DNA of 64,000 nucleotides from Hydrolagus colliei (GCA_035084275.1 CM068742.1:154690001-154754000); one strand, 5' to 3'. Positions 2,596 to 29,724 are shown, counted from the first letter of the stretch. The notes: a model not told the origin generated them from the letters alone. Numbers and translations are program-made.

Positions 2596-2647
2596 ATGAT
2601 GCTGGGAGCTGTGCTCTGCGCCCTGGTCCTGTCAGCCTCTGCCTTAC
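2596..2647 (+). CDS. Gene A leader exon ([17 protein letters not shown], signal peptide)
   Basis: Hydrophobic 17-mer ending ASA-L. Phase-1 donor C|GTACGT fits the phase-1 V1 acceptor. Conserved upstream of every V1. Confidence 0.8.
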
Positions 2648-5600
2648 GTACGTACTTTCCAATCAGTAACTATAATAAGTGCTCACACACGATTGTCACC
2701 TCAATGCTCGATTCCGGCAACTCCCTCCTTGTCGGCCTCCCCAACTCTTCACTCCACAAGCTGCAGATAATCCCAAACTTTGCACCTCGTGTCCTCTCCC
2801 ACAACAGGCTCTGTGACCCTATCACTCCCACCCTCGCCCATATCCAGTGAGGAGATCTCAGAGGATTGAATTCCAGATTCACATACTCATGTACAAGACT
2901 CCCCACCCTCCTACCTCGCTGACCTGCTGATCCCCTCTCCAACTATCTGCTCTCTCCATTCAGCAAGCTCCGGCCTTCTCCATGTATCCCGTCTGACCCG
3001 CCCTTCCAACTTTGGTGGGCTTGCAGACCCTCTGCTCCTATGCTTTTTGGAACTCAATTGAATAATCCCTTCACCTTGCTCCCTAACTTGCCTTGTTTAT
3101 GGCTGGCCTCAAGCCCTTCCTTTTTGACTGTCCCTTCAGCTGCTATCCTGTCTCATGCCAACCCTGGCCACCCAACCCACCTCCCCCATACTTGAGTCCT
3201 GACCCATGACTGTTCAGCGCCTTGGGACGTCCTCCCAACATGAAAGGTGCTCTACACATGTGGTTGTTGTGGTTGTTTATCTTTTAGTGGCATGATTACA
3301 TGTGTAATGATTACAAGTGTGTGTTTGTTACCTCTGCCTCCGTTTGATTTCCCCAATCTCTCTCTGTCTTGTCTGTGTTACTTTTCGCTTGCCACTGGAG
3401 CTCTTTACTCTAAACTGATTCCCAAGTGTCAATACTAGTTAAACCGTATCAGTTACCCCCAAACCACATTCTGGGGTCCTCTTGCATTAGACACTTGGGT
3501 GACAACAAATGATGGTATTTTAATATTACACCCAGACCACAACAGCGTTTTTCTTTCCACAAGCCACCCATAGTAACCCCTCTGACCTGTCACTCCCCTT
3601 CCCCTTCACACTTAATATGCCTGCTCTTCAAACATCTATCCAATTCTCTTTGATAGACTTGACGGATGATGCATCAAATTCAGTTTGTGGCAGATAATTC
3701 CACAATTCCACCCATTCTGTGTAACGACAGGAAAACCAAAGTGTTTCCTTGTTAACTCTCTGCTTCTACTTTACCTAATTTAAGCCTTCATAATTCCTTT
3801 TTTGAGATGGTATTAGATGTGTTCTTCTTGAGACTATCTCTCTGGTCTATTTCCGGATCAGCTAAAATGTGTTGCTATTTCCCCTGTTGTGATCTGTTGC
3901 GACCTCTATCTGTTCGCCCCAAACCTTCTCTGTTCTTCAGCCACCAATCTCTCAAATCTCTCTTCAGATCTGAAACCCCTCATCTCTGGGAATGTGCCAA
4001 TAAACAAGCAATTTGTATTCCATTGCTGTTATTTCGTTCTTACAGAGAATCCCAAACTGTCTCAAAATTCCAAACCAAGCTCTTGTCCAAGCTCAGTGTT
4101 GCCTGTTTGATTTTATATTGTGTTCTGGTTCACATTACACCATGTGTGTCCTCACAGGGATCAGTGTGAATGGCTGGACAATGGAGACCCCTGATACAGT
4201 GACCGGCAGGTTAGGGTCACCAGTCATCGTGTACTGCAAGTTTGTTGAGCCGCACCCCAGATACACAGGCAACATCACCATCACGTGGAAGGGAGGCTGG
4301 ACTAGTCCTGTGTATTTTAAATATACAAACTATAGGCCAGATTCACAGGAAAAGTATCAAAATATCATTGATGTAAACGAGGGAGATCGATACCGAGTGA
4401 TTGGGAACCCGAGGAGGAACGACGCTACAATACAGATAAACCAGCTGAGGGGAGAGGACAATAAGAAGTGGTGCAACTGTCGTGTTCAGCTCCAGGGTGA
4501 GGATGGAATGTGTGAAACTGGCCCCGAAACACATCTGTATGTTACAGGTGAGGAACGATGGGAAGTGGGAATGAGACGTGATGATCCTCACTGGTGCTGG
4601 AGACATATTGTGAGGGTATAGATGTGTGGAACTCCCACTGGTTTAGATATTCTTAACAATGGTGACAGATTTCTCCATGTATAAGGCAAATGTCTGCCCA
4701 AATACAAGAGATTTTCTCCTTGGGTCATCACCAAAAATCCTTTATGTTTATCAGTCAATCATTTCATAACCATTGAGATCTTTGATCTGAGTAAACTGAC
4801 TGCAAAAGTGTCACTATATTTATAGTAACAAATAAAAATAATGATTGTAGTTCATATTACATCTGATTACATTTTCTTGATATAAAAGGAAGTGCTGACT
4901 AACCTCTATAGGACTTTGGTGAGGCCTCAGCTGGAATACTGTGTTCAATTCTGGTCACCACACTACAGAAAGGATGTGAAGGCATTGGAAAGGGTACAAC
5001 GAAGATTTACTAGGATGGTGCCAGGATTGAGGGACTTCAGCTATGAGGAGAGGCTAGATAGGCTAGGGTTATTCTCTCTGGAGCAGAGAAGATTGAGGGG
5101 AGACCTAATAGACATTTATAATATCATGAGGGGTTTCGACAGGGCAAATAGAGAAAAACTATTTCCACTCGTGGGTGAATCTGTGACTCGTGGTCACAGA
5201 TTTAAAATAGTTTCAAGGCGCAGTAGAGGGGAGCTGAGGAGAAATGTTTTCACTCAGCGAGTTGTTCGAATCTGGAATGCATTGCCTGAAAAGCTGGTGG
5301 AGGCTGATTCGATAACAACTTTTAAAAGGGAATTAGATCTTTATTTAGGGAGAACGGGTCTATTAGGCTATGGGGAACGGGCAGGGCAGTGGGATTGAAT
5401 CGCTCTTTTCAAAGAGCCGGCACAGACTAGATGGGCCGAATGGCCTCCTTTTGTGCCGTAAAATTCTATGATTCTATGATTCTTACAGATCAATAGATTA
5501 CTCTATGAAGTGAATTGACTGTATATTTTGTTGGCAAAATATGGTAGCCAATTGCACACAGCAGTTTCCCATAGATACTCGTGGATTGAGTAACCAAAGC

Positions 5601-8600
5601 TTTGTTTAAGGGATTATTACCAAGCAAAGAAATACGCCAATCGAAGAACACAATTGTTTCCTATGTACCCTTAGGTAAACAGACATGTGTGGACAAAGGA
5701 AAATTACCCAAGGTTTTTCCCTACCCATGAATCAAGCTCAGGTCCTCTATAGTATGAGGCAAGTGTTCTAAGTTACAAGGCTAATCAGTAAGAAGGTTGT
5801 TGGTGCTATTAAAAGCCAAAGTTTAATTAGTGAGACATTGCTGCCCACAATCTCAGAGAGGGTGAGTGAGGAGCACAGGCCTGAGGGAGATAGTGCCATG
5901 AAAAGCAGGAATATACAGGATGTGTAACATGTACTGTGTCTCACTGACTGCTCTGCACTATTCCAATCCTGTTCCTGTCTCAGGTCATGAAGAGAAGCTC
6001 CCGTCAGTGACTGGTACCAAGGGAGGTGATGCCACACTGCCCTGCTCCTTCATCAGGCCCAACACACACCTGAATCCTGCCACAGTCACAGTGATTTGGA
6101 GGAGAGGGAGGCCACACGGGCAGCCAGTTACTAATGACACTCTTGGCCTCACCGCCCGCTCCAACCCCAGGGAGTCAGAGACAGTGAATGAAGGAAATCG
6201 CCATAACCTGGTTGGGAATGTGAGGGTTGGAGACACTTCCCTGAGGATCAAGGATCTGGAGTTAAACGATACCGACCAGTATTTCTGTAACGTACACATC
6301 ATGTTTATCAATAGCGGAGAACAACAAGTTCATGTGACACAGGACACATCACGGCTGCTGGTTGTTGGTAAGAAATCTCTTGTCTCTGTGGGACATGGAA
6401 AGGGGTAAATGTCAATGTTCACGGGCGCATCATTACAGACTAGGTTTGTCTCATTCCTTACCCTGTGCCTCACGTGTTAATTAGCACAAGAAACATGTTA
6501 TGAAACAGCAGAACCTTTTCCCTGGGGGGAGGGATTCTTCTCACTTGCCTCCCGTTAACGCTGCAGCCAAAGTTAGGGTGATCCTAGCTGGACAAGCAGC
6601 CGGTATCTTGCCAATGACATGTGACGTAGTTGTCACAAGATCACAGGATTGGTCTGAATGAAGAAACCCCATCTAGTCATATACATACTGAACCCCCAAA
6701 TCACCCGCTAATCCCTACCAACCCCTCGCCCCCCAAAACATTGGTATCAAGCGGAATCTAAAAGTCTGTAATTGCTCTGCCTGAAGGGAAATTGGATAGA
6801 TACGTGAAAATGAAACATTTTCAGGGCTCTTTTGTAAGACTGGGATAGAATGACTAGTTGAGAGATCCTGTAGCTTGGAGCACTTGCCGTGGAACCCAGA
6901 GGACCTGGGTTAGATTATTGCGCTGGGGAAACCATTGGGCAAACTGCCTTACTCCAAACACGCGTTTACCCAGTAATGAGTGCGAATCCAGCTGTCAGTT
7001 GATTGGCAGGCAATTTTCTGGGGTAATAATCGCTTAAAGAAATATATTTAGAAAAAAAATGTGATCGATCAGTGCTGTGATTAAAAATTAGCTGCTGGGT
7101 TTTGCTCACAAAAATATACAGGTACAGTCAATTATCTTGACAGTATATTCTAATAATCTCTCCCCCAAAAAATACAATAGTAAAATTGGTCATTTCAATC
7201 CACAACTCTTCGTGGGACGCTGCTGTGCGCAATTGCCTGCCACGCTTTGCCCATAAGTATACAGTCAATTCACTTGATAGTACATTCTGTGAAGCACCTT
7301 GAGACATCTAGAAGACGTGAAAAGCACCTTATCAAAATGCAAGGATTATTTTTAATTATTATTTTGTGAAGCGGTTTTAGTCGTTGAGAAGATGTGAAAA
7401 CTTCTATATTAAATGCAATTATTATTATCATTACTAGTGATGATAGAAGTAGCAGTAAATACAAGGATGATTATATATTACAGCTCTTTCAAAGAACCGG
7501 TTACAGAGACGATGTTGCAAATGGCCTTCTTCCTGCTATAAGATTCTATGATATTAAAATGGAAATATTAAATATTTGGAGATGAACATTATAAACAAAA
7601 CAAAAATGGACAAGAAAAAAGCAGGCAATCAGATTAGAGCAGAAAACAACAACAACAAAATTACATTTGTATAGTGTCTTTCATGATGGCGGGCCATCTG
7701 AAGAACACCAGTGAGTAAGCGAGTACTAGTGGATATGACGGTGAAAGTAATTTAATTGGAATAACTCTGTGTTTCTTTATACCCAAAGCTCCGGCCGTCA
7801 TCCTGACTCTGTCCCTCGTGGCCAGTGATGGAGCCGGAGGTGGCATCGTGTGCACGGCTGAGGGGGAACCACCAGCCACCATCACATGGATCGACCCCCA
7901 GAATAACACGCTGCCCGTCAACACCCACACGTCAATCACACATATACCAGACATGTATCTAACCTTGGGGGAAATCTGGGACCTGAAGTTGAGGGGAACG
8001 TACCGCTGTGTAGCTGAGAACACACAGGGCAACGACACCCGAGACATCCTCGTCACTGCCCTACAGAGTGAGGTGGACAACGAGAGTGATGGGGACAACG
8101 AGAGTAATGGGGACAGTAATTTGTATGTCAGGGTCTCCATTGTGGTCATGCTTGTTCTGCTGATTGCCTTCATTGTCCATTGGGTAAAGAGAGGTAGGTG
8201 TTTACAGATGTAGTGATTATGTGGATTTGTGGATTCCTGTAGCTCAGTGGTCACTGAGTATTCGACTTACAAACATGAGACCTGCGTTCAATTCCAGGCA
8301 GGGTGAAACATTTGCCAAGTTTCCTTATTCCACACGCCTGATAATAATTATGACTGATTGTAGGATTTTGCTATGTGCAAGTGGCTGCCTCATTTAGCCC
8401 ACAAATATACAGCACAGGCAATTCACTTTACAGTATCTTCTGTGAAGCACTTTGAGACTTCTAGAAGATGTGAAAAGCGCTATCTCAAATGCAAGGATTA
8501 TTATTATTATTCCAAATGAGTCTAGCAGAGCCAATCGCTTCCTCAACTCTGACTCAGCAAATATTCTGCCATATACACACACTTGGCAACCACATCATCA

Positions 8601-9984
8601 TCATCATCATCGTAATAATAAACCTTGTATTTGGTATAGCGCTGTTCACATCCTATCGACCTCTCAAAGCGCTTCACTGAATATACTGTAAAGTGAATTG
8701 ACTGTATATTTGTGAGCAAATCACAGCAGCCAATTGCGCACAGCAGTGTCCCCACAAACAGTCGTGGATTGAAACGACCCATTTTATTATCGTGTTTTTT
8801 TCAGACGGATTATTATTAGGTTTGGAGTAAGAAAACTTGCTAGATTTCGCCCTGACCTGCCTAGATTCGAACACAGGTCTCTCCAACGTGGTCTCCCCAG
8901 CTTGCAAGACAAGTGCTGTAACCACTGAGCCACAGGAGCTCCACCTGGTTAATACTAAGCAGAAGGAGACAAAGAAAAATTCTTGCATTTGGTATTGCCA
9001 GCCGGTGGTATATCTGGCTTCCTGTTTAGTAACCATAGTTACATAACACAATAGGAAGAGAACAGTTTGCCACAAGCCTTTCACTGGAATAACGTACACA
9101 CTTATCAAACCAGCAAAACATCTAAAGCAATAACAAATGAAATAATGATTATTATGATGATTATTATCTCTCCCCTTGCTTTCGTCTCTTCAGGTGTCAG
9201 AGTTTTCCGCCAGCGTTCAGAGAGGTGAGTGTGTCTTTCTAATGCCTTTACCTTTCCATTGACATTCAAGTTGCAAAGGGCTATTGAGCACCATGTTTGG
9301 CAAGCTTCCTGCTTCTCTCTCCAGCTACGACCACCCTACCCATTGGGGCTTTGGCTTGCAGGATTAATAGGATGAGTATGAGGATTCCCTGACACCAGTG
9401 GCTGGTCTTCCCTTCCAATTCTTGCCAATGAGTAGACTGGCTTTGCTGCCACCAGCAGTGCCCCAGAATATTAGATACTCACCTGGCTCAGGAACAAGAC
9501 TGAAGACCCACAGATTGTTGGCTTGAATCTGACAATCTGTTTCCAATCATGTCACCTTGGAGCCAGAGAAGCCAAGGAAACACCGTGTAGCTTAATCTAG
9601 ACAAACACCATGCACACAATCCTGTGGCCAAGCTGAGGCTTGGACTCTTCAGACAAGAGGCTTTTGCCCTATGTTCTATGCCAACAATCCCTCAGTAAAC
9701 CCATGATAGTTTGTGGGGAAGTTGTTGTATGAGCATTGGCTGATGTCATTCACATAAAATACAAAGTCATTACACTTTACAGTAAATCCTGTGAAGTGCT
9801 ATAAGACGTCCTCCTGATGTGAAAGACATGGTATCAAATGTGAGGATTATTAACGATGAGGTTTATCTTCCATCCTCTATAAAATGTAAAATATAAAATA
9901 TAAAATGTTTTCTCTTTATTTTTTAGTCGTCAAATGGATTTGGTTGTTGACAATGACTTTGTTCAACCTCAGCTGCCTACATGA
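2596..9984 (+). CDS. SIGLEC15-like: Gene A: Siglec-15-like receptor, V1-V2-C2-TM(Arg)-short Tyr-free tail, about 439 aa, putative activating type
   Basis: Exons 2596-2647, 4158-4547, 5984-6367, 7789-8193, 9194-9224 and 9927-9984(TGA), all GT-AG and phase-compatible (1320 nt). The motifs PHPRY, GNPRRND, CRVQ and CTAEGEPP resemble Siglec-15 as recalled from memory (BLAST needed). Confidence 0.8.
2680..3276 (+). mobile_element. L2-clade LINE 3' fragment in the leader intron (paralogs ~17330-17935, ~22275-22870, ~39410-39990, ~58350-58970)
   Basis: Degenerate ORF2 C-terminus ([32 protein letters not shown]) and a 3' tail cgccttgggacgtcc...aaaggtgctctacacatgtggttgttg. Boundaries approximate. Confidence 0.7.
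4158..4547 (+). CDS. Gene A V1 exon (Siglec-type V-set domain, Arg retained)
   Basis: cacag|GG acceptor, ACAG|gtgagg donor, 390 nt open, CNCRVQ. Confidence 0.9.
4885..5483 (+). mobile_element. CR1 LINE 3' end (~600 bp), specific to gene A
   Basis: ORF 4892-5398 is the CR1 ORF2 C-terminus ([13 protein letters not shown]). (ATTCTATG)n tail. The empty site cttgatatacagatc is seen in gene B. Confidence 0.95.
5984..6367 (+). CDS. Gene A V2 exon (second V-set domain, no Arg after the F-strand Cys)
   Basis: 384 nt open, phase 1-1, YFCNVH. Confidence 0.9.
7789..8193 (+). CDS. Gene A C2-set + acidic stalk + transmembrane exon
   Basis: ccaaag|CT acceptor, AGAG|gtaggt donor. [10 protein letters not shown]...GTYRCVAEN...[25 protein letters not shown]. 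Confidence 0.9.
8234..8511 (+). mobile_element. tRNA-derived SINE (paralogs ~26669-26982, ~46703-47014)
   Basis: A box TAGCTCAGTGG, B box GTTCAATTCC, 3' tail aaatgcaagg(att)n. Confidence 0.8.
8594..8942 (-). mobile_element. tRNA-derived SINE (paralog ~27064-27415; absent from gene C)
   Basis: The reverse complement has GGAGCTCCTGTGGCTCAGTGG...GTGTTCGAATC and the same 3' tail family. Confidence 0.75.
9194..9224 (+). CDS. Gene A cytoplasmic exon 1 (31 nt)
   Basis: tcttcag|GTG...AGAG|gtgagt, phase 1-2, conserved in three copies. Confidence 0.8.
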
Positions 9985-9988
9985 GACG
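9927..9988 (+). CDS. Gene A cytoplasmic exon 2 with in-frame TGA at 9982-9984
   Basis: tttttag|TCG...GACG|gtaact, phase 2-1. The equivalent codon is GGA in gene C. Confidence 0.8.
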
Positions 9989-10104
9989 GTAACTGTTTTC
10001 CCTCGATTACCGATGGCACAATTTTCACCCCGTGCTTTCACTAACCCAGGGCTGTGTCTCAGCTTTGCTCAGTCAGTGACACTCTCACCTCTGGCTCTGG
10101 GTGT

Positions 10105-10565
10105 CTGACCTTCAAATCCCTCCACTCATCTGCACCCCGCTACCTGTCTAAACTCCTCTCTCCTCAAACCAGTTCCCGTTGGGACATTTCAGCGTTTCAG
10201 CGCCTTGGGACGTCCTCCCGACGTAAAAGGCGCTCTATAAATGTAAAATGTTGTTGTTGTTGTTGTTGTTGCCTTCGCTCCACTGGGTCTGGCCTCCTTC
10301 ATGTCCTGTGAATCCTACGCTCCACCCTCGGCGGCCGTGCCTTCAGCCACTATGCCCCAATGCTCTGGAATTCCCTTCCTCACTCCCTTCATCTCGACCC
10401 CTCTTTTCTCAGTTTCAGGTCCCAGCTGAAGACCTTTCTCTTCGACCGTGCCTTTGGTCACCTTTCTCCTGCCCCTGGCTCGGTTCCGCGGTCCACTATT
10501 GTGAATTGCTCTGAGACGCCGTCCGTCGTGGAGGGCCCAATATAAATCAAAGCTGTTGTTGTTGT
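10105..10565 (+). mobile_element. L2-type 3' fragments occupying the site of the region deleted in genes A/B (paralog ~28559-28930)
   Basis: L2-like 3' sequence (gctgaagacctttctcttcgaccgtgcc) with (TGT)n tails. Boundaries approximate. Confidence 0.6.
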
Positions 10566-11366
10566 TGTACTATATATACTGTACAATTTTGTTTTTTGTT
10601 GTTGGGAGGGCGTCCTTGACGTGTAGTGTTAGAAAAGAGAAAGGAGTTTCTCTGGGTGTCCAGATTAAATTGTTTATTTACTTCATGGCTCTTTGTGGGT
10701 CCGTGTTGATTGTCGCATTCGACAACAATAACAGCAACAACAACAAAATTATATATGTGTGGCGCCTTTAATGTCAGGAGGACATCCCATGGTGCTGGAC
10801 AGTTACTGCTTCAGACCTGAGCAGAGCACAGGTCTGGGCGGGGGGGGAAGGAGTTGTCGGTGGGTCTATCGAAGAGGAGATTCTTGAATCGAGACTTGAA
10901 AGAGTACAGTCGGGGGGCGAGGCCGAGGAGCTTCAGGATGGAGTTCCAGAGGTTGGGGTCAGAGTGATTGAAGGCTCAACAAATCCAGTCGCAACATAAC
11001 ACAGTGAATCCTGTCAAATGCTATCAGATGTACTACGATATGTTTTGACAATGTGATAGCACCACTTTGCTGTGTCCCTCAAATGTGAAATACATAATAA
11101 ATTAGTGTTGCTGTTGTTATTAAATCAAATGGAATAATATCCAGCCCCTCGGGCCTCGCATGTGGTTCCAATTCCCAGTTCACTGTTCATTCCTTGAACC
11201 CTTTGTCCCAGCTTTGGGGACTGGGCTTCAGACATTAAAGCCATATCTCTGGACTTCCACATACACAGTACATACACACTCCATTTGATAACTAGTGTCA
11301 TATTTCCTTTGTGAAGCCAATTTTCAATTGCTAATTATTTACCAACATTGTCTGTCTTTCCTTCAG

Positions 11367-11405
11367 ACGTGCACGGAAATTCTACCATCAGAACCGTCGA
11401 TGACA
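11367..11405 (+). pseudogene. Gene A tail exon 5, downstream of the stop (YGN->HGN)
   Basis: cttcag|AC...GACA|gtgagt, paralog of 53318-53356. Confidence 0.7.
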
Positions 11406-12011
11406 GTGAGTGTTGTCTACCTTTTCTGGTTTATTGTTTATCCTGTCTCTTCTCCGCTCGCACTCTGGCTTTGGGTCAGGAGGAGGGGTATTGGAGCCTC
11501 TAAGTTGGGGAATTTGAGGTCACACAGTCCAGGCTGATGCTCCAGTGCAGCAATGGGGAGAGCGCTGCATTGTCAGAAGTGCTGTCCTTTGAATGCGATA
11601 TTAAACTGAGATCAAGTCCATGTCTGATGAAGTTGTTTTGGTCTGCCACGTGCAGAAACACATCTGTTTGTCAAGAGGATCAAAACTTGACTGAGAGTTC
11701 CTGTCACCTGTACATCTGGAATGCAACGTGCTGTTGAGAAGGGAATTTATCTTTCCTTGTGTCCTGGCCATCATTGTTTCAAATAAAATTGGTCGCTCAC
11801 TTCATGGCTATTTCTTTGACATTTCAAACACAAATTGTGCACCAGGTTTGCTGGTAAAATACACATTCACTACAATGGACTGTTTTTCTTTGAGATATTT
11901 GGACTTTATATTAATATGAGGTTTCGAGTGACTTTAAGTTGGTCACACAGTGTATCACAGCTCTCAGCAAGTGGAGGTACATGTCCTGATTCCATTTTGT
12001 TTCTCTTCTAG

Positions 12012-12064
12012 ATGTGATTTATGCTGTTGTCTCCAAATCGAAGAGGAGCTCAGCTGAGCAGTGA
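12012..12064 (+). pseudogene. Gene A terminal exon with untranslated ITIM relic (VIYAVV)
   Basis: ttctag|ATGTGATTTATGCTGTTGTC...TGA, paralog of 53955-54007. Confidence 0.75.
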
Positions 12065-13937
12065 ACTCTGTCCCCTCCCAGAGTCTGCTGTCCACAGTTT
12101 ATATAGGTGTGTCCTGCAGTGACTTATATTGGGCCTGGATCAGCAGCCAATACAATAACATTGTACAATCAGTCCCTGAGAGAGCACGGCTCATTACAGT
12201 CCCAGTGTGTTTGTAGTGTGGCTGTGGCTTGTGGCCTTGCTGTGTGTAAACACATGTTATTGCTGCCTGTGACCTGCAATTTACAATTGTGTTTATCTCC
12301 ACTTCAGTGAAATCAAACATGAGGGGGTCAGGCCTAAAAGGAAGAAAGAGTCTATTCTCTGTCAGGGAGAAACACTACCACTTGGTGGACATTCCGGGGT
12401 TGATTACTACATTTTTTCACAGATAATTTAGATCTACCGTTCAAAAATAGTAATCCTTTCAATTGATATAGACGTCTTTAAAACATCATGCAATTGCTTG
12501 CATCATTGTCCCCAAAACAGTCATAGATTGAGTGACTAAATTATTATTAATCATCAGTTATTATAAGGGATTATTACCCCCAGAAAAGCAATCCATCAAT
12601 TGACCAACAATTCAATGCTGGGTCAACTGAGGCATGTGGAGTAAGGAAACATGCCGACGTATGAGTGTGCTGCCTTTACACTCTGGGCCACTGGGGGCAC
12701 TGCAGGATCGTCATCAGTTCACAAACCAGTGGACAATCTGTCTCAATGTTTTCTAACTGAATGACTTGCTTGATGATTAAACTTCTTTGTCTCTCTGACC
12801 AGTGGATATGTTCCTTATTCCGCAAGTTGACCCTGAATGTAGATTCGTGGCTGGGCTTTCATTGTTGAAAGCGGCTGCCAAGACTGGAACAAGAGAACAT
12901 GTCTGGGTGTGTTACATCTGATGGGTATATAAAGGGGAGAACTGCGAGAGCCTCAATGGAGCCTAGAGCTGGCAGAGTGAGTGCGACCCGAGTGAGGCGA
13001 GACCAGAGTGAGAAGGAATTGGATGAGAGTGAGAATTAGGTGCAAAGTTATAAAATATAAAACAAACCCCCACTGCCCCAGATCAGCCTTCCTCTCCCTC
13101 CGACCACTACGCCTCCTGTCCCTGCTTGACTGGCCCACAGCTTTCCTCTGCTCCTCTCTTCACATTCTCTGTCACACACACCATGGCAGACGCCGCTATC
13201 TGTCCAACAGCACCCACACTGACTGCCCCATCCCCCACTCTCATCTCAAGGTCCATCAGTCCCCTTCACTGGGGGCAAACCTTTCCTTCCTCAGACATAT
13301 CCCCACATTCCCTTTCAATACTCCAGGAGACATGAAGGAGACCAGAGCTCTTTGAATGTAGCGAGCGGGCTCCCTCCTTGCCTCTAATAATACTCTCCTC
13401 TAGCCCTTCAATTATCTTACCATCCCTTCATACTCTCCCTGCCCTCTACCCCTCCTTATCCCAAGCCCCAACTCAGAGTCAAATCCCTCACTGTCCAATG
13501 CTTTAGGACATCCTACCGACATGAAAGGCACTATACAGATGTAATTGGTTGTTGATATAATAATTATTCTTGCATTTGATTTAGCACCTATCATGTGAGA
13601 TGTCTCAAAGCGTTTCACAAATATTCACTGGAAAGTGAATTGACTTTAAGGTGTATTCGGTGAAGCGCTTTGACACATCAGTGTTTTCACTGTTAATATC
13701 AGAAGTTATAGCGTTTTTATTGGTACGGACAGGGGAGAGAATTCCAATGAAAGTTGACAGAAGTAATCTGGGAACTATCCCTCCGTTTGCCTGACCTCAA
13801 CAATTTTACTTCTTAATTTTTTCACCAAAGAAAGCAAGTGGCCGATTATCACTTGCTTTCTTTAGATATAATAATAATATAATTGATAGTTGGCACATGT
13901 TCGGAAAAGGTACATATAGTTTGACCAAACTCATAGA

Positions 13938-17241: not shown

Positions 17242-17293
17242 ATGATACTGGGAGCTGTGCTCTGTGCCCTGGTCCTGTCAGCCTCTGCCTTAC
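17242..17293 (+). CDS. Leader exon of truncated unit psi1 ([17 protein letters not shown])
   Basis: Intact ATG and C|GTACGT donor. Confidence 0.7.
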
Positions 17294-19058: not shown

Positions 19059-19343
19059 TGTGACTTGGTGTGACCTCTATCTGGTCGCCCCAAACCTTCT
19101 CAATTTGTGAGCCACCAATCTGCCAAATCTCTCTTCGGATATGAAACTTATCATCTCTGTGGACTTGCCAACACACTAGGATGCATCTTTTCCATTTTTT
19201 AAAATAATGTTCTGATAGTGGATCCACAAATTGTCTACACTAAACCCAGCTGTGACCTAACCAAGCTCTTGTCCAAGTTCAGTGTTGCCTGTTTGCTTTT
19301 ATATTGTGTTCTGGTTCACATTACACCATGTGTGACCTCACAG

Positions 19344-21169: not shown

Positions 21170-21207
21170 CTCCGGCCTTCATCCTGACTCTGTCCATCAT
21201 GGCTGGT
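21170..21207 (+). pseudogene. C2 exon stub of psi1
   Basis: Same breakpoint (GGCTGGT|CCACAGAATTAG) as 1816-1853. Confidence 0.85.
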
Positions 21208-21949: not shown

Positions 21950-24900
21950 ATGATGCTGGGAGCTGTGCTCTGTGCCCTGGTCCTGTCAGCCTCTGCCTTA
22001 CGTACGTACTTTCCAATCAGTAACTATAATTAATAATAATAATCAATAATAATAATCCATCCAAAAAAAAACCACAATAATAAAATTGGTGATTCACTCC
22101 ACGACTGTTGGTGGGACACTGCTGTGCATAATTGGCTGCCGGGATTTGCCCACAAATATATAGTCAATTCACTTTACAGTATATTCTGTGAAGCGCTTTG
22201 GGACGTAGATAAGATGTGAAAAGCGCTGTATCAAATGCAAGGATTCTTCTTCTTATTATTATAATAATAAATGCTCACACGCGATTGTCACCTCAATGTT
22301 CGGCTCCGGCAACTCCCTCCTTGTCGGCCTCCCCAACTCTTCCCTCCACAAGCTGCAGATAATCCCAAACTTTGCACCTCGTGTCCTCTCCCACACCAGG
22401 CTCTGCGACCCTGTCACCCCCACCCTCGCCCGTATCCAGTGAGGAGATCTCAGAGGATTGAATTCCAGATTCACATACTCATGTACAAGACTCCCCACCC
22501 TCCTACCTCGCTGACCTGCTGATCCCCTCTCCACCTATCTGCTCTCTCCATTCAGCAAGCTCCGGCCTTCTCCATGTATCCCGCCTGACCCGCTCTTCCA
22601 ACTTTGGTGGGCTTGCAGACCCTCTGCTCCTATGCTTTTTGGAACTCAATTGAATAATCCCTTCACCTTGCTCCCTAACTTGCCTTGTTTATGGCTGGCC
22701 TCAAGCCCTTCCTTTTTGATTGTCCCTTCAGCTGCTATCCTGTCTCATGCCAACCCTGGCCACCCAACCCACCTCCCCCATACTTGAGTCCTGACCCATG
22801 ACTGTTCAGTGCCTTGGGACGTCCTCCCAACATGAAAGGTGCTCTACACATGTGGTTGTTGTGGTTGTTTATCTTTTAGTGGCATGATTACATGTGTAAT
22901 GATTACAAGTGTGTGTTTGTTAACTCTGCCTCCGTTTGATTTCCCCAATCTCTCTCTGTCTTGTCTGTGTTACTTTTCGCTTGCCACTGGAGCTCTTTAC
23001 TCTAAACTGATTCCCAAGTGTCAGTACTAGTTAAACCGTATCAGTTACCCCCAAACCACATTCTGGGGTCCTCTTGCATCAGACACCTGGGTGACAACAA
23101 ATGATGGTATTTTTATATTACACCCAGACCACAACAGCGTTTTTCTTTCCACAAGCCACCCATAGTAACCCCTCTGACCTGTCACTCTTCTTCCCCCTCA
23201 CTCTTAATATGCCTGCTCTTCAAACATTTATCCAATTCTCTTTGATAGACTTGACGGATGATGCATGAAATCCAGTTTGTGGCAGATAATTCCACAATTC
23301 CACCCATTCTGTGTAATGATAGGAAACCAAAGTGTTTCCTTGTTAACTCTGCTTCTACGTTACCTGTTTAAGATCCTCATAATTCCTTTTTTGAGATGGT
23401 GTTAGATGTGTTCTTCTTGAGACTGTCTCTCTGGTCTATTTCCAGATCTGCTAAAATTTGTTGCTATTTCCCCTGTTGTGATCTGTTGTGATATCTGGTC
23501 GCCCCAAACCTTCTCCGTTCTTCAGCCACCAATCTCTCAAATCTCTCTTCAGATCTGAAACCCCTCATCTCTGGGAATGTGCCAATCAACTAGCAATTTG
23601 TTTTCCATTGCTGTTATTTCGTTCTTAGAGAGAATCCCAAACTGTTTCAAAATTCCAAACCAAGCTCTTGTCCAAGCTCAGTGTTGCCTGTTTGCTTTTA
23701 TATTGTGTTCTGGTTCACATTACACCATGTGTGTCCTCACAGGGATCAGTAAGAATGGCTGGACAATGGAGATCCCTGATACAGTGACTGGCAGGTTAGG
23801 GTCATCAGTCATCATGTACTGCAAGTTCACTCACCCTCACCCCAGATACACAGGCAACATCACCATCATGTCGAAGGGAGGCTGGTCTGGTCCTGTGTAT
23901 TTTAATTATACAAACTATAGGCCAGATTCACAGGGAAAGTATCAAAATGTCATTGATGTAAACGAGAGAGATCGATATCGAGTGATTGGGAACCCGAGGA
24001 GGAATGACGCTACAATACAGATAAACCAGCTGAGGGCAGAGGACAATAATAAAAAATTCTCCTGTCGTGTGGAGCTCCAGGGTGAGAATGGAAGGGGTGA
24101 AACTGGCCCGAGAACACGTCTGTATGTTACAGGTGAGGAAAGATGAAGTGGGAATGAGACGTGATGATCCTCACTGGTGCTGGAGACATATTGTGAGGGT
24201 ATAGATGTGTGGAACTCTCACTGGTTTAGATATTCTTAACAATGGTGACAGATTTCTCCATGTATAAGGCAAATGTCTGCCCAAATACAAGAGATTTTCT
24301 CCTTGGGTCATCACCAAACATCCTCCATGTTTATCAGTCAATCATTTCATAACCATTGAGATCTTTGATCTGAGTAAACTGACTGCAAAAGTGTAAACTA
24401 TATTTATAGTAACAAATAAAAATAATTATTGTAGTTCATATTACATCTGATTACATTTTCTTGATATACAGATCAATAGAATACTCTATGAAGTGAATTG
24501 ACAGTATATTTTGTTGGCAAAATATGGTAGACAATTGCACACAGCAGTTTCCCATAGATGCTCGTGGATTGAGTAACCAAAGCTTTGTTTAAGGGATTAT
24601 TACCAAGCAAAGAAATACGCCAATCGAGGAAAACAATGGTTTCCTATGTACCCTTAGGTAAACAGACATGTGTGGACAAAGGAAAATTACCCAAAGTTTT
24701 TCCCTACCCATGAATCAAGCTCAAGTCCTCTATATTATGAGGCAAGTGTTCTAAGCTACAAGACTTATCAGTAAGAAGGTTATTGGTGCTATTAAAAGCC
24801 AAAGTTTAATTAGTGAGACATTGCTGCCCACAATCTCAGAGAGGGTGAGTGAGGAGCACAGGCCTGAGGGAGATAGTGCCATGAAAAGCAGGAATATACA

Positions 24901-27900
24901 GGATGTGTAACATGTACTGTGTCTCACTGACTGCTCTGCACTATTCCAATCCTGTTCCTGTCTCAGGTCATGAAGAGAAGCTCCCGTCAGTGACTGGTAC
25001 CAAGGGAGGTGATGCCACACTGCCCTGCTCCTTCACCAGGCCCAACACACACCTGAATCCTGCCACAGTCACAGTGATTTGGAGGAGAGGGAGGCCACAA
25101 GGGCAGCCAGTTTCTAATGATACTCTTGACCTCACCTCCCGCTCCAACCCCAGGGAGTCAGAGACAGTGAATGAAGGAAATCGCTATAACCTGATTGGGA
25201 ATGTGAGGGATGGAGACGCTTCCCTGAGGATCAAGGACCTGGAGTTAAACAACAACGACCAATATTTCTGTCATGTACACGTCATGTTTATCAATAACGA
25301 AAAACAACTGGACCATGTGACACAGGACACATCACGGCTGCTGGTTGTTGGTAAGAAATCTCTTGTCTCTGTGGGACATGGAAAGGGGTAAATGTCAATG
25401 TTCACGGGCGCATCATTACAGACTAGGTTTGTCTCATTCCTTACCCTGTGCCTCACGTGTTAATTAGCACAAGAAACATGTTATGAAACAGCGGAACCTT
25501 TTCCCTGGGGGGAGGGATTCTTCTCACTTGCCTCCCGTTAACGCTGCAGCCAAAGTTAGGGTGATCCTAGCTGGACAAGCAGCCGGTATCTTGCCAATGA
25601 CATGTGACGTAGTTGTCACAAGATCACAGGATTGGTCTGAATGAAGAAACCCCATCTAATCTTATCCTTACTGAACCCCCCAATCACCCCCTAATCCCTA
25701 CCAACCCCTCGCCCCCCAATACATTGGTATCAAGCGGAGTCTAAAAGTCTGTAATTGCTCTGCCTGAAGGGAAATTGGATAGATACGTAAACAGGAAACA
25801 TTTTCAGGGCTCTGGGGTAAGAGTGGGATAGAATGACTAGTTGAGAGATCCTGTAGCTTGGAGCACTTGCCGTACAAGCCCGAGGACCTGGGTTAGATTT
25901 TTGCGCTGGGGAAACCATTGTGGGCAAACTTCCTTACTCCAAACACGTGTTTACCCAGGAATGAGTGTGAATCCAGCTGTTAGTTCATTGGCAGGTAATT
26001 TTCTGGGGTAATAATAGCTTAAAGAAAAAAGAAAAAAGCAGGCAATGAGATTTGAGCATAAAACCAACAACAGCAAAATTACATTTGTATAGTGTCTTTT
26101 ATGTTGGGGGGCCATCTGAAGAACACCAGTGAGTAAGCGAGTACCAGCGGATATGACAGGAAAATTTATTTAATCAGAATAACTCTGTGTTTCTTTATAC
26201 CCAAAGCTCCGGCCGTCATCCTGACTATGTCCATCGTGGCTGGTGATGGAGCCGGAGGTGGCATCGTGTGCACGGCTGAGGGGGAACCACCAGCCACCAT
26301 CACATGGATCGACCCCCAGAATAACACGCTGCCCGTCAACACCCACACGTCAATCACACATATACCAGACATGTATCTAACCTTGGGGGAAATCTGGGAC
26401 CTGAGGCTGTGGGGAACTTACCGCTGTGTAGCTGAGAACACACAGGGCAGTGACACCCGAGACATCCTCGTCACTGCCCTAAAGAGTCATGGGGACAGGG
26501 AGAGTGACAGGGACAAGGAGAGTGACGGGGACAAGGAGAGTGATGGGCACAGTAATTTATATGTCAAGGTCCCCATTGTGGTGCTGGTTGTTCTGCTGAT
26601 TGCTTTCATTGTCCATTGGGTAAAGAGAGGTAGGTGTTTACAGATGTAATGATTATGTGGATTTGTGGATTCCTGTAGCTCAGTGGTCACTGAGTATTCG
26701 ACTTACAAACATGAGACCTGCGTTCAATTCCAGGCAGGGTGAAACATTTGCCAAGTTTCCTTATTCCACACGCCTGATAATAATCACTCAAATAATCAAT
26801 AATAAATTGGTCATTTCAATCCATGTCTGTTTGTGGGCATTTTGCTATGTGCAAATGGCTGCCTCATTTAGCCCACAAATATACAGTGCAGACAATTCAC
26901 TTTACAGTATATTATGTGAAGCACTTTGAGACTTCTAGAAGATGTGAAAAGCGCTATCTCAAATGCAAGGATTATTATTATTCCAAATGAGTCTAGCACA
27001 GCCAATCGCTCCCTCATCTCTGACTCAGCAAAAATTCTGCCATATACACACACTTGGAAACCACATCATCATCATCATCATCCTAATAATAAACCTTGCA
27101 TTTGATACAGCGCTGTTCACATCTTATCGACGTCTCAAAGCGCTTCACTGAATATACTGTAAAGTGAATTGACTGTATATTTGTGAGCAAATCGCAGCAG
27201 CCAATTGCGCACAGCAGTGTCCCCACAAACAGTCATGGATTGAAATGACCCATTTTATTACCGTGGTTTTTTCGGACGGATTAGCATTAGGTGTGGAGTA
27301 AGGAAACTTGCTGAAGATTTCGCCCTGACCTGCCTGGATTCGAACACAGGTCTCTCCAGCTTGGTCTTCCCAGCTTGCAAGACATGTGCTCTAACCACTC
27401 AGCCACAGGAGCTCCACCTGGTTAAAAATAAGCAGAAGGAGATGAAGAAAAATTATTGCATTGGTATTGCCAGTCGGTGGTATATCTGGCTTCCTGTATA
27501 GTTACATAATACAATAGGAAGAGAACAGTTTGCCACAACTGCTTTCACTGGAATAACGTACACACTTACCAAACCAGCAAAACATCTACAGCAACATCAA
27601 GTGAAATAATGATTATTATTATGATTCTTATCTCTCCCCTTGCTTTCGTCTCTTCAGGTGTCAGAGTTTTCCGCCAGCGTTCAGAGAGGTGAGTGTGTCT
27701 TTCTAATGCCTTTACCTTTCCATTGACATTCAAGTTGCAAATGGCTATTGAGCACCATGTCTGGCAAGCTTCCTGCTTCTCTCTCCAGCTACGACCACCC
27801 TACCCATTGGGGCTTTGGCTTGCAGGGTTAATAGGATGAGTATGAGGATTCCCTGACACCAGTGGCTGGTCTTCCCTTCCAATTCTTGCCAATGAGTAGA

Positions 27901-28438
27901 CTGGCTTTGCTGTCACCAGCAGTGCCCTAGAATATTAGATACTCACCTGGCTCAGGAACAAGACTGAAGACCCACAGATTGTTGGCTTGAATCTGACATT
28001 CTGTTTCCAAACATGTCACCTTGGAGCCAGAGAAGCCAAGGAAACACCGTGTAGCTTAATCTAGACAAACAATCCTGTGGCCAAGCTGAGGCTTGGACTC
28101 TTCAGACAAGAGGCTTTTGCCCTATGTTCTATGCCAACAATCACCTCAGTAAACCCATGATAGTTTGTGGGGAAGTTGTTGTATGAGCATTGGCTGATGT
28201 CATTCTCATAAAATACAAAGTCATTACACTTTACAGTAAATCCTGTGAAGTGCTATAAGATGTCCTCCTGATGTGAAAGACATGGTATCAAATGTGAGGA
28301 TTATTAACGATGAGGTTTATCTTCCATCCTCTATAAAATGTAAAATATAAAATATAAAATGTTTTCTCTTTATTTTTTAGTCGTCAAATGGATTTGGTTG
28401 TTGACAACGATTTGGTTCAACCTCAGCTGCCTACATGA
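21950..28438 (+). CDS. SIGLEC15-like: Gene B: Siglec-15-like receptor, V1-V2-C2-TM(Lys)-short Tyr-free tail, about 445 aa, putative activating type
   Basis: Exons 21950-22001, 23743-24132, 24967-25350, 26207-26629, 27658-27688 and 28381-28438(TGA), 1338 nt open. The V1 C-strand Trp is replaced by Ser. Confidence 0.78.
23743..24132 (+). CDS. Gene B V1 exon
   Basis: 390 nt open, KFSCRVE. TCG (Ser) at 23871 replaces the conserved TGG. Confidence 0.9.
24967..25350 (+). CDS. Gene B V2 exon
   Basis: 384 nt open, YFCHVH. Confidence 0.9.
26207..26629 (+). CDS. Gene B C2/stalk/TM exon
   Basis: 423 nt open, [25 protein letters not shown]. Confidence 0.9.
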
Positions 28439-29724
28439 GACGGTAACTGTTTTCCCTCGATTACCGATGGCACAATTTTCACCCCGTGCTTTCACTAACC
28501 CAGGGCTGTGTCTCAGCTTTGCTCAGTCAGTGACACTCTCACCTCTGGCTCTGGGTGTCTGACCTTCAAATCCCTCCACTCCTCTGCACCCCCCTACCTG
28601 TCTAAACTCCTCTCTCCTCGAACCAGTTCCCGTTGCCTTCGCTCCACTGGGTCTGGCCTCCTTCATGTCCCGTGAATCCTCCGCTCCACCGTCGGCAGCC
28701 GTGCCTTCAGCCACTATGCCCCAAGGCTCTGGAATTCCCTTCCTCACTCCCTTCGCCTCGCCCCCTCTTTTCTCAGTTTCAGGTCCCAGCTGAAGACCTT
28801 TCTCTTCGACCGTGCCTTTGGTCACCTTTCTCCTGCCCCTGGCTCGGTTCCGGGGTCCACTATTGTGAATTGCTCTGAGACGCCGTCCGTCGCGGAGGGC
28901 CCAATATAAATCAAAGCTGTTGTTGTTGTTGTACTATATATACTGTACGATTTTGTTTTTTGTTGTTGGGAGGGCGTCCTTGAAGTGCAGTGTTAGAAAA
29001 GAGAAAGGAGTTTCTCTGGGTGTCCAGATTAAATTGTTTATCTACTTCATGGCTCTTTGTGGGTCCATATTGATTATCGCATTCGACAACAATAACAAAA
29101 ACAACAACAAAATTACATATGTGTGGCGCCTTTCACGTCAGGAGGACATCCCATGGTGCTGGACAGTTACTGCTTCAGACCTGAGCAGAGCACAGGTCTG
29201 GGCGGGGGGGGAAGGAGTTGTCGGTGAGTCTATCGAAGAGGAGATTCTTGAATCGAGACTTGAAAGAGTACAGTCGGGGGGCGAGGCCGAGGATCTTCGG
29301 GATGGTGTTCCAGAGGTTGGGGTCAGAGTGATTGAAGGCTCAACAAATCCAGTCGCAACATTACAAAGTGAATCCTGTCAAATGCTATCAGATGTACTAC
29401 GATATGTTTTGTCAATGTCATAGCACCACTTTGCTGTGTCCCTCAAATGTGAAATACATAATAAATTATTGCTGCTGTTGTTATTAAATCTAAATGGAAT
29501 AATATCCAGGCCCCAGGGCCTGGCATGTGGTTCCAATTCCCAGTTCATTCTGTGAATCCTTTGTCCGAGCTTTGGGGACTGCGCTTCAGACATTAAACCC
29601 ATATCTCTGGACATCCACATACACAGTACATACACACTCCATTTGATAACTAGTGTCATATTTCCTTTGTGAAGCCGATTTCCAATTGTTAATTATTTAC
29701 CAACATTGTCTGTCTCTCCTTCAG

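What the first reader, a model, noticed from the sequence alone, without database searches (positions are those of the whole stretch)
9927..12064. Premature stop plus loss of two exons places the stop inside the NMD-escape window
Seen: A and B share GGA->TGA 4 nt before the exon 2 donor (9982, 28436). Both lack the ~3.7-kb segment (about 48760-52480 in C) holding tail exons 3 and 4. The stop is then 4+39 = 43 nt upstream of the last junction; with exons 3 and 4 present it would be 163 nt. Established: vertebrate NMD usually needs a stop more than 50-55 nt upstream of the last junction. Inference: the exon deletion makes the truncated mRNA stable, so A and B are likely expressed proteins rather than NMD-degraded pseudogenes. 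The now-untranslated YxN motif has decayed independently (HGN in A, YGD in B).
Basis: partly seen in the sequence, partly recalled or inferred. Interest (0 to 1): 0.75.

Follow-up and report, generated by a model that had tools for sequence, protein, structure and literature searches.

The report
Tail-less immune receptor genes, stop near last junction
Two neighbouring copies of a chimaera-type immune receptor gene share a stop codon and a loss of two small exons; this turns an inhibitory receptor into a short-tailed one that probably avoids mRNA surveillance, a familiar kind of receptor conversion whose mRNA stability is still untested.

Summary
Copies A and B share GGA->TGA (9982-9984, 28436-28438), 4 nt before the donor of tail exon T2. 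Both lack the two 60-nt ITIM exons that copy C has (49101-49160, 52120-52179). The stop lies 4+39 = 43 nt before the last junction; with those exons it would be 163 nt.

Corrections:
- A and B are products of a ~19-kb tandem duplication, so stop and deletion are one event each, not two.
- Of the "3.7 kb", 2.27 kb is a young LINE inserted only in C. The real loss is ~1.46 kb, replaced exactly by one 5'-truncated retroposon.
- A Callorhinchus milii locus shows that the missing DNA is ancestral.
- The comparator C has a 1-nt deletion in its first Ig exon.

The genes are Siglec-15-like Ig receptors (V-V-C2-TM, modular ITIM tail). A and B keep open frames of 439 and 445 codons, about 8e-4 likely under neutral decay. 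Both have a basic residue (Arg, Lys) in the membrane segment where C has Gly. This is the classic inhibitory-to-activating paired-receptor conversion.

The NMD geometry is correct and permissive, but nothing shows it was selected (chance about 0.2). No transcript data were reachable.

The parts
2596..2647 (+). Copy A, leader (signal peptide) exon, 52 nt, ends in phase 1
   Evidence: tblastn with the C. milii protein P0001; sequence and donor TTAC|gtacgt
4158..4547 (+). Copy A, V1 exon (V-set Ig, Siglec-15-like, Arg kept in ...CRVQL...), 390 nt, open
5984..6367 (+). Copy A, V2 exon (V-set Ig), 384 nt, open
7789..8193 (+). Copy A, C2/I-set Ig + acidic stalk repeat + transmembrane exon; the Arg codon AGG at 8130-8132 lies inside the hydrophobic segment [19 protein letters not shown]
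9194..9224 (+). Copy A, tail exon T1, 31 nt (GVRVFRQRSE)
   Evidence: Conserved exon with ag/gt in A, B and C; matches T1 of C. milii P0001/P0021
9927..9988 (+). Copy A, tail exon T2, 62 nt; premature TGA at 9982-9984, 4 nt before the donor
10106..10567 (+). A/B-specific filler at the site of the lost T3/T4 segment. It is one 5'-truncated interspersed retroposon copy ending in (GTT)n. It contains an A-only 86-bp SINE-tail insertion at 10182-10267.
11367..11405 (+). Copy A, tail exon T5, 39 nt, now downstream of the stop; YGN has changed to HGN
   Evidence: a T5-like YxN exon is present in the elasmobranch homolog P0014
12012..12064 (+). Copy A, last exon T6 up to the ancestral stop; the ITIM VIYAVV is still intact but untranslated
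12065..12800 (+). Copy A, presumed 3' UTR. Blocks 12065-12340 and 12664-12760 are 98-100% identical in A, B and C. An ATTAAA shared with B and C lies at 12776.
21950..30422 (+). Copy B, whole gene. Exons: leader 21950-22001, V1 23743-24132, V2 24967-25350, C2/TM 26207-26629 (Lys codon AAG at 26566-26568), T1 27658-27688, T2 28381-28442 (TGA at 28436-28438), retroposon filler ~28560-28931, T5 29725-29763 (YGD), T6 30370-30422.
39322..54007 (+). Copy C, ITIM-type comparator. Exons: leader 39322-39373, V1 41629-42017 (389 nt; 1-nt deletion in the C-run 41659-41661, giving an in-frame TGA at 41670-41672 under the normal leader splice), V2 43531-43914, C2/TM 46205-46663 (Gly codon GGG at 46600-46602), T1 47345-47375, T2 48581-48642 (GGA at 48636-48638), T3, T4, T5 53318-53356 (YGN), T6 53955-54007.
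49101..49160 (+). Copy C, tail exon T3, 60 nt, phase 1-1 ([20 protein letters not shown]); absent from A and B
49673..51937 (+). Young LINE (CR1-like, reverse-transcriptase ORF fragments) inserted in the T3-T4 intron of C only
   Evidence: 96-97% identical to 35260-37514(-) and 60816-62678; empty site in the C. milii locus L001 at 27672/27676
52120..52179 (+). Copy C, tail exon T4, 60 nt, phase 1-1 ([20 protein letters not shown], a canonical ITIM); absent from A and B; tandem duplicate of T3
   Evidence: (134 nt, 81% identity to the T3 region)

Best explanation
The window holds a tandem array of Siglec-15-like Ig-superfamily receptor genes from a holocephalan (chimaera-type) genome. Each gene has a leader, two V-set domains, one C2/I-set domain, an acidic stalk, a transmembrane segment, and a cytoplasmic tail built from small modular exons: T1 31 nt, T2 62 nt, T3 and T4 60 nt each, T5 39 nt, then T6.

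The ancestral tail, kept in copy C, carries one ITIM-like motif (AIYSVV), two canonical ITIMs (VIYSEV, VIYAVV) and a YxN motif. It is therefore an inhibitory-type receptor.

In the common ancestor of A and B, three changes converted this into a short-tailed receptor:
(i) GGA->TGA near the end of T2 ends the protein before every tyrosine motif.
(ii) A ~1.46-kb stretch with T3 and T4 was lost. A 5'-truncated retroposon sits exactly in its place, probably an insertion-associated deletion.
(iii) Gly->Arg arose in the outer third of the membrane segment. It later became Lys in B, so the charge was kept.

The ~19-kb unit then duplicated to give A and B.

[quoted passage not shown] That is inside the zone where a terminating ribosome usually does not leave a downstream exon-junction complex. 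EJC-dependent NMD is therefore not expected, and the stop lengthens the 3' UTR by only 96 nt.

A and B are then most likely translated into 439- and 445-residue membrane receptors with a ~25-residue tail. They would act as activating-type partners (through an acidic-TM ITAM adaptor) or as signalling-dead decoys of the inhibitory form.

Shown here: sequence anatomy, polarity of the deletion, maintained ORFs, the basic TM residue. Inferred: splicing as modelled, mRNA stability, adaptor pairing, and any selective role of NMD.
For: - Anatomy and frame: exon maps, splice sites and translations of A, B and C.
- Family: the best homologs are C. milii and ray/sawfish proteins, some named sialic acid-binding Ig-like lectin 15. 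Pfam finds V-set and I-set domains.
- Ancestral tail: C. milii P0001 and P0021 have T1-T2-T3-T4. P0014 has repeated ITIM modules, a YxN module (TVYENCSTRASED) and a final AAIYAAVV.
- Polarity: homology of C. milii locus L001 with A/B stops at the breakpoint but runs on in C to 48912. It also covers C 49596-49670 and 51942-52287, on either side of the LINE.
- The filler is a single 5'-truncated retroposon.
- Function retained (indels): no frameshift in 1317/1335 coding nt, against 19 frameshifting indels in 6,752 aligned intron nt. This gives 3.7 expected and P0 = 0.024.
- Function retained (stops): no new stop despite 95 substitutions, P = 0.034.
- Function retained (substitutions): polarised changes are 24 synonymous to 47 nonsynonymous, p = 0.032 for omega < 1.
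- TM codon: GGG (C), AGG (A), AAG (B), inside the best 19-residue hydrophobic window.
- Arg-in-TM, ITIM-less relatives exist in other cartilaginous fishes: P0025 and the first half of the Mobula model P0003.
- NMD rule as stated in PMC12776119.
- Precedent: activating KIR arose from inhibitory KIR through a few changes that add a TM charge and remove the ITIMs (PMC2213150).
- No SECIS or other Rfam match that would suggest TGA recoding.
Against: - There is no transcript or protein evidence for this species, so splicing of T2->T5->T6, the poly(A) site and the absence of 3'-UTR introns are all assumed.
- Pairwise dN/dS between A and B is 0.76 and not significantly below 1.
- B has lost the core Trp of V1 (ITIMSKGG).
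- The exons are more diverged than the introns (7.2% vs ~5%). Patches of 96-100% identity between A/B and C show gene conversion. Conversion could keep frames open without selection on A/B themselves.
- The basic residue sits near the outer edge of the membrane segment and might be interfacial.
- The NMD boundary is graded, with a peak near 71 nt, and it has not been measured in cartilaginous fishes.
- The canonical AATAAA present in C at 54383 is absent at the matching site in A and B.
Confidence: 0.5

Rival explanations
1. A and B are decaying pseudogenes. The TGA was simply an inactivating mutation, and the loss of T3/T4 and the changes in T5 are neutral after-effects. The open frames persist because the copies are young or are patched by gene conversion from working paralogs.
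For: - dN/dS between A and B is 0.76 overall and 0.95 in V1, not significantly below 1.
- B has a W->S change at the core Trp of V1.
- The array is rich in dead copies: psi0 and psi1 have several frameshifts, and C has a frameshift.
- There is clear mosaic conversion between the copies.
Against: - The joint probability of no frameshift and no stop in both copies is about 8e-4.
- All 16 splice sites are intact.
- The TM codon changed twice while keeping a positive charge.
- Polarised changes give omega of about 0.6, p = 0.03.
Confidence: 0.2
2. A and B are working short-tailed receptors, but the NMD geometry is incidental. The retroposon-associated deletion was a neutral accident, before or after the stop, and the transcripts would have been adequately expressed either way.
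For: - A stop that removes all Tyr motifs would fall in the NMD-immune zone by chance in roughly 6-7 of ~33 tail codons, about 0.2 (own count).
- NMD efficiency is variable and graded.
- The deletion looks like the by-product of a retroposon insertion.
- T3+T4 total 120 nt, so their loss is in frame and harmless to an ITIM-bearing ancestor.
Against: Nothing in the sequence distinguishes this from a selected role. At 163 nt the stop would sit in the zone where internal PTCs show robust NMD in human data.
Confidence: 0.3
3. The stop affects only one isoform. T1+T2 together are 93 nt and start and end in phase 1. Skipping both would join the TM exon in frame to T5/T6 and give an ITIM-bearing isoform, so A and B could be dual-output genes, in the manner of the CEACAM1 long and short tails.
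For: - Phase arithmetic.
- The T5 and T6 splice sites and the VIYAVV ITIM are intact in A and B.
- The T5-T6 region is unusually conserved between A/B and C, at 94-100%.
Against: - YxN has been lost in both copies by nonsynonymous changes.
- The conservation extends into the introns and the UTR, so it looks like conversion rather than coding constraint.
- No homolog protein model skips T1+T2.
Confidence: 0.1

Closest known systems
Activating KIR / Ly49 derived from inhibitory homologues (paired receptors; Abi-Rached & Parham 2005, PMC2213150)
   Same: A few mutations in a duplicated inhibitory Ig receptor add a basic transmembrane residue and remove the ITIMs by shortening the tail. The ectodomain stays close to that of the inhibitory partner, the genes lie in a tandem array, and gene conversion and pseudogenes are frequent.
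   Different: This is a different Ig family (Siglec-15-like V-V-C2) in a holocephalan. The tail is built of many mini-exons, so a stop in T2 would be far from the last junction unless exons are lost. The ITIM exons were physically deleted with a retroposon in their place. Adaptor pairing is untested.
Siglec-15 and the paired Siglecs (Siglec-5/14, Siglec-11/16); this comparison rests on my own knowledge
   Same: The nearest named relatives are annotated Siglec-15. The V1 domain keeps the ...CRVE... Arg-containing F-strand motif. The family contains both adaptor-type and ITIM-type members.
   Different: True Siglec-15-type relatives (P0002, P0004, P0008) have a different TM exon with a mid-membrane Lys. 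No such exon is in the window. Here there are two V-set domains. The basic residue of A/B is a new substitution in the ITIM-type TM.
NMD-escaping premature stops (the 50-55-nt rule of Nagy & Maquat; e.g. dominant truncations in last or penultimate exons)
   Same: [quoted passage not shown]
   Different: Here the stop is in the antepenultimate exon. It reaches the immune zone only because two downstream exons are missing and the penultimate exon is only 39 nt. The change is fixed in a gene lineage rather than being a disease allele, and stability is inferred, not measured.
Retrotransposition-associated target-site deletions (described for L1 and Alu in mammals; own knowledge)
   Same: A 5'-truncated retroposon with its tail sits exactly where ~1.46 kb of ancestral DNA is missing.
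   Different: The element family is a cartilaginous-fish repeat. The mechanism is inferred only from the flush boundaries. I did not examine target-site duplications.

Membership tests
Paired inhibitory/activating Ig receptors (activating member derived from inhibitory) | Closely related ectodomains in neighbouring genes | tested here: met
   A/B versus C differ by 8-10% of nucleotides in the V1, V2 and C2/TM exons and lie in the same tandem array
Paired inhibitory/activating Ig receptors (activating member derived from inhibitory) | The inhibitory partner carries ITIM(s) in its tail | tested here: met
   C has VIYSEV (T4), VIYAVV (T6) and the ITIM-like AIYSVV (T3). Caveat: C has a V1 frameshift
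Paired inhibitory/activating Ig receptors (activating member derived from inhibitory) | The activating partner lacks ITIMs and has a basic residue in the TM | tested here: met
   The stop precedes all Tyr motifs. A has Arg (AGG 8130-8132) and B has Lys (AAG 26566-26568), against Gly in C, all inside the best 19-residue hydrophobic window
Paired inhibitory/activating Ig receptors (activating member derived from inhibitory) | Association with an acidic-TM ITAM adaptor (DAP12 / FcR gamma type) and activating signalling | not testable with these tools
   Needs co-expression and co-immunoprecipitation
NMD-escaping premature termination codon | [quoted passage not shown] | tested here: met
   43 nt in A and in B under the exon model; 4 nt if T5 is skipped
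NMD-escaping premature termination codon | No further spliced intron downstream (3' UTR) | not testable with these tools
   There is no transcript data. The 3' UTR is colinear in A, B and C with a shared ATTAAA ~710 nt after the old stop, which neither shows nor excludes an intron
NMD-escaping premature termination codon | The mRNA level is insensitive to NMD inhibition | not testable with these tools
   Experimental
Siglec-15 orthologs | One V-set plus one C2-set domain, with the sialic-acid-binding Arg in the V-set F strand | tested here: inconclusive
   V-set and I-set domains are found. A ...CRV[EQ]L... motif is present in V1 of A, B and C. However, there are two V-set domains, and the Arg assignment rests on memory of human Siglec-15
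Siglec-15 orthologs | Mid-membrane Lys in a Siglec-15-type TM, short tail | tested here: not met
   The TM exon of P0002/P0004/P0008 (…KCLFLL… / …VKFL…) has no counterpart in the window. The window genes use the ITIM-type TM

The most novel reading that the evidence does not exclude
The loss of the two ITIM exons was not neutral. A retroposon-associated deletion (or the later stop) was retained because it placed the termination codon inside the NMD-immune zone. This would make exon loss a compensatory step that lets an inhibitory receptor with a multi-exon tail be converted into a stable short-tailed, activating-type receptor. If so, NMD constrains how paired receptors can evolve in families with mini-exon tails.
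Probability: 0.15. Interest if true: 0.7.

Novelty: new member of a known kind. Interest (0 to 1): 0.4.

Why it matters
If A and B are expressed, they would be an example, in one of the oldest jawed-vertebrate lineages, of the inhibitory-to-activating receptor switch known from KIR, Ly49, LILR and Siglecs. It would have been made with the same ingredients: a TM charge plus ITIM removal.

This gives a concrete and cheaply testable case: a minigene with and without the two 60-nt exons.

On present evidence the NMD part is a consistent geometry, not a demonstrated adaptation.

Tried and rejected
- I looked for transcript- or annotation-derived proteins identical to A, B or C, to get direct expression evidence. 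The best hits were only 58-78% identical C. milii proteins, so nothing was usable.
- Genomic look-ups of P0001 and P0002 failed. P0021 succeeded.
- Selenocysteine or other recoding of the TGA is rejected. There is no SECIS or any Rfam hit above threshold in 7500-13500, and the context is TGA-G.
- An alternative in-frame donor upstream of the TGA within T2 is rejected. No internal GT gives the needed phase (own check on the sequence).
- 'C gained T3/T4' is rejected on the C. milii proteins and locus.
- Recombination between two homologous SINEs as the deletion mechanism is not supported. The A/B filler has no detectable homology to the interior of the C segment.
- Literature searches for NMD in the evolution of paired receptors, or for Siglec-15 in elephant shark, returned nothing specific.
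- Pairwise dN/dS alone was uninformative.
Full report
WHAT THE WINDOW IS

Self-comparison shows a tandem array of ~19-kb units with many interspersed repeats. Translated searches and protein homology identify the repeated gene as an Ig-superfamily receptor. Its nearest relatives are Callorhinchus milii (elephant shark) proteins at 58-78% identity, together with ray and sawfish proteins. Several of these are named sialic acid-binding Ig-like lectin 15 by their sources.

DNA of a C. milii locus (L001) aligns to the window at ~78-87% in exons and neighbouring introns. No protein identical to a window product exists in the databases. The source is therefore a holocephalan relative, or a divergent paralogous cluster, without annotation in reach.

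Pfam finds V-set and I-set domains.

GENE MODELS

| Exon | Copy A | Copy B | Copy C |
|---|---|---|---|
| Leader | 2596-2647 | 21950-22001 | 39322-39373 |
| V1 | 4158-4547 | 23743-24132 | 41629-42017 |
| V2 | 5984-6367 | 24967-25350 | 43531-43914 |
| C2/stalk/TM | 7789-8193 | 26207-26629 | 46205-46663 |
| T1 (31 nt) | 9194-9224 | 27658-27688 | 47345-47375 |
| T2 (62 nt) | 9927-9988 | 28381-28442 | 48581-48642 |
| T3 (60 nt) | absent | absent | 49101-49160 |
| T4 (60 nt) | absent | absent | 52120-52179 |
| T5 (39 nt) | 11367-11405 | 29725-29763 | 53318-53356 |
| T6 | 12012-12064 | 30370-30422 | 53955-54007 |

All listed exons have canonical ag/gt sites.

A fourth copy, D, starts at 58263 and runs off the window after V1. 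Two partial copies are present: psi0 at 1-~1860 and psi1 at 17242-~21200. They have a multiply frameshifted V1, an open V2 and only a C2 fragment.

T1 was found as a conserved 31-nt exon. It fits the phase and matches the T1 peptide of C. milii P0001 and P0021.

THE OBSERVATION

- A and B read ...CCT ACA TGA GAC G|gt, and C reads ...CCT ACA GGA GAC G|gt.
- The stop is 4 nt from the T2 donor, T5 is 39 nt, so the distance to the T5/T6 junction is 43 nt.
- With the two 60-nt exons the distance would be 163 nt.
- T5 encodes EVYGN in C, VHGN in A and LYGD in B.
- No relic of T3 or T4 exists in A or B.

All of this is confirmed.

REFINEMENTS

(1) A and B are not independent.
- A-B intron substitution divergence is about 5%.
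- The two copies share both breakpoints and the stop.
- The stop and the deletion therefore happened once each, in the A/B ancestor.

(2) The 3.73-kb C-only stretch (48764-52491) contains a 2,265-bp LINE (49673-51937).
- The LINE is 96-97% identical to copies at 35260-37514 and 60816-62678.
- In the C. milii locus the two flanks of this LINE are adjacent: L001 27600-27672 matches C 49596-49670, and L001 27676-28023 matches C 51942-52287.
- The LINE is therefore a later insertion in C, and the DNA lost in A/B was ~1.46 kb.

(3) The polarity is a loss in A/B.
- C. milii proteins P0001 and P0021 have two 20-residue ITIM modules after T2.
- L001 homology with A/B stops at the breakpoint (A 10106, B 28560) but continues in C to 48912.

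(4) What A/B carry in place of the lost DNA is one 5'-truncated copy of a common interspersed repeat, ending in (GTT)n.
- It fits flush between the two breakpoints.
- It has no homology to the C interior.
- This looks like an insertion-associated deletion; that is an inference.

(5) T3 and T4 are tandem duplicates of each other: 134 nt at 81% identity, including intron flanks.

(6) The comparator C is itself compromised.
- Relative to A, B, D and the C. milii proteins, it lacks one C in the run at 41659-41661.
- With the normal leader donor (TTAC|gtacgt) this gives a TGA at 41670-41672.
- Everything downstream is open in the shifted frame.
- The same 3-C state is found in psi0 and psi1.
- A second GT 4 nt downstream in the leader (GTAC|gtac) would restore the frame.
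- Whether this is a recent lesion, a conversion from a pseudogene, an assembly error in a homopolymer, or is compensated by splicing cannot be decided here.

ARE A AND B ALIVE?

Evidence that they are:
- Both are open from ATG to the TGA, 439 and 445 codons.
- In 6,752 aligned A-B intron positions there are 330 substitutions and 19 small indels not divisible by three. For 1,326 coding nt, 3.7 frameshifts are expected and none is seen (P0 = 0.024). The only exon indel is an in-frame 18-nt unit of the stalk repeat.
- With the 95 exon substitutions that separate A and B, simulation gives P(no stop) = 0.034. Jointly the two probabilities come to about 8e-4.
- Changes unique to A or B, polarised with the other copies, are 24 synonymous to 47 nonsynonymous. 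The neutral expectation is 23.5% to 76.5%, giving p = 0.032 and omega of roughly 0.6.

Evidence against, or confounders:
- Pairwise dN/dS is 0.76 and not significantly below 1.
- B has replaced the core Trp of V1 by Ser.
- Exons are more diverged than introns.
- Patches of 96-100% identity between A/B and C show ongoing gene conversion. They cover the TM end and following intron, the T5-T6 region and the first 280 nt of the 3' UTR. Conversion can keep frames open.

THE TRANSMEMBRANE CHANGE

- The codon is GGG (Gly) in C.
- C. milii relatives have Gly (P0001) or a hydrophobic residue, Ile or Met (P0005; P0006 and P0021).
- A has AGG (Arg) and B has AAG (Lys).
- The position lies inside the best 19-residue hydrophobic window, LYV[R/K]V....
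- The codon therefore changed twice while the positive charge was kept.
- Relatives with an Arg in the same part of the TM and no tyrosine motif exist elsewhere. Examples are P0025 and the first half of the fused Mobula model P0003, whose second half is ITIM-type.

Together with removal of every tyrosine motif, this is the signature by which activating receptors arise from inhibitory ones in KIR and Ly49 (PMC2213150).

THE NMD ARGUMENT

[quoted passage not shown] Recent saturation data, also, show a gradient, with a peak about 71 nt upstream of the last junction and a gradual decline.

How this applies to A/B:
- At 43 nt the A/B stop is on the evading side, and it would be at 4 nt if T5 is skipped. 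The C. milii protein P0001 lacks T5.
- At 163 nt, or 124 nt without T5, it would sit where internal stops show robust NMD.
- The EJC of the T2/T5 junction would lie upstream of the stop and be cleared by the ribosome.
- The stop adds only 96 nt to the 3' UTR.

The geometry is therefore genuinely permissive.

What cannot be said:
- That the deletion was retained because of this.
- Which event came first. T3+T4 total 120 nt, so their loss alone is in frame and harmless.
- That the geometry is significant. After the deletion, the positions that both escape NMD and precede the first tyrosine amount to about 6-7 of ~33 tail codons, so a chance fit has a probability near 0.2.
- That the modelled last junction really is the last. 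No RNA data were reachable, and a 3'-UTR intron cannot be excluded. The C-type AATAAA (54383) is absent at the matching A/B site, while an ATTAAA about 710 nt after the old stop is shared.

OTHER READINGS

- Pseudogenes: possible, but disfavoured by the ORF statistics and the TM codon history.
- Dual-output genes: skipping T1+T2 (93 nt, phase-neutral) would join the TM exon to T5/T6 in frame. The ITIM of T6 is intact in A and B. However, YxN has been lost in both, and the local conservation extends into introns, so it looks like conversion.
- TGA recoding: no support.

VERDICT

- The locus is best described as a new example, in a holocephalan Siglec-15-like family, of an inhibitory receptor converted to a short-tailed, TM-basic form.
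- The stop position is compatible with NMD escape because the two ITIM mini-exons are gone.
- Novelty: a new member of a known kind.
- The NMD-as-constraint idea is attractive and easy to test, but is currently only a consistent geometry.

Noticed in passing
41659-41672 (copy C, V1 exon); also psi0 ~20-30 and psi1 ~19375-19385; leader donors at 2644-2655, 39370-39381: The 'intact' ITIM-type copy C has a 1-nt deletion (CCCC->CCC) near the start of V1. With the normal leader splice this gives a TGA three codons later, yet the remaining ~1.5 kb of coding sequence is open in the shifted frame. psi0 and psi1 share the 3-C state. A tandem GTAC|GTAC donor in the leader exon, 4 nt downstream, would restore the frame.
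   Followed up: partly
8130-8132 (A), 26566-26568 (B), 46600-46602 (C): The transmembrane codon is AGG (Arg) in A, AAG (Lys) in B and GGG (Gly) in C. A/B gained a positive charge and kept it through a second substitution.
   Followed up: yes
10106-10567 (A), ~28560-28931 (B): The lost T3/T4 segment is replaced exactly by one 5'-truncated interspersed retroposon with a (GTT)n tail, which suggests an insertion-associated deletion. A additionally has an 86-bp SINE-tail insertion at 10182-10267.
   Followed up: partly
12065-12340 and 12664-12760 (A); 30423-30700 and ~31022-31118 (B); 54008-54285 and ~54765-54860 (C): The 3'-UTR blocks are 98-100% identical in all three copies, although the background A-C identity is 80-88%. 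Over 12103-12303, A equals C while B differs. The cause is gene conversion or strong constraint; there is no Rfam match.
   Followed up: partly
46488-46574 (C); shorter arrays in A ~8060-8125 and B ~26480-26560: There is a perfect 18-nt tandem repeat, 4.8 copies in C, encoding an acidic DRESDG stalk just outside the membrane. Copy number differs between A, B and C, always in frame.
   Followed up: partly
4158-4547 versus 23743-24132: The V1 exons of A and B differ by 10.3%, while their flanking introns differ by 2.5-4.3%. A, B, C and D are nearly equidistant in V1. A has 15 nonsynonymous to 4 synonymous private changes, including two new cysteines. B has lost the core Trp (ITIMSKGG). This points to diversifying selection, conversion, or decay.
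   Followed up: partly
1-1860 and 17242-21200: Two partial gene copies (psi0, psi1) sit before A and before B. Each has a leader, a multiply frameshifted V1, an open V2 and a C2 fragment, but no TM or tail exons.
   Followed up: partly
35260-37514 (-), 49673-51937 (+), 60816-62678, 4887-5483, 44160-45150: There are several young copies, 95-98% identical, of one CR1-like LINE with reverse-transcriptase ORF fragments, so the element was recently active in this array. One interrupts the D copy after V1 and one lies in the T3-T4 intron of C.
   Followed up: partly
L001 (C. milii) 1-40212: In C. milii an ITIM-type gene (P0021) lies between two genes with the Siglec-15-type, Lys-containing TM (the 480-aa and 414-aa products). 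Adaptor-type and ITIM-type members are thus interleaved there. That TM exon type is absent from this window.
   Followed up: partly
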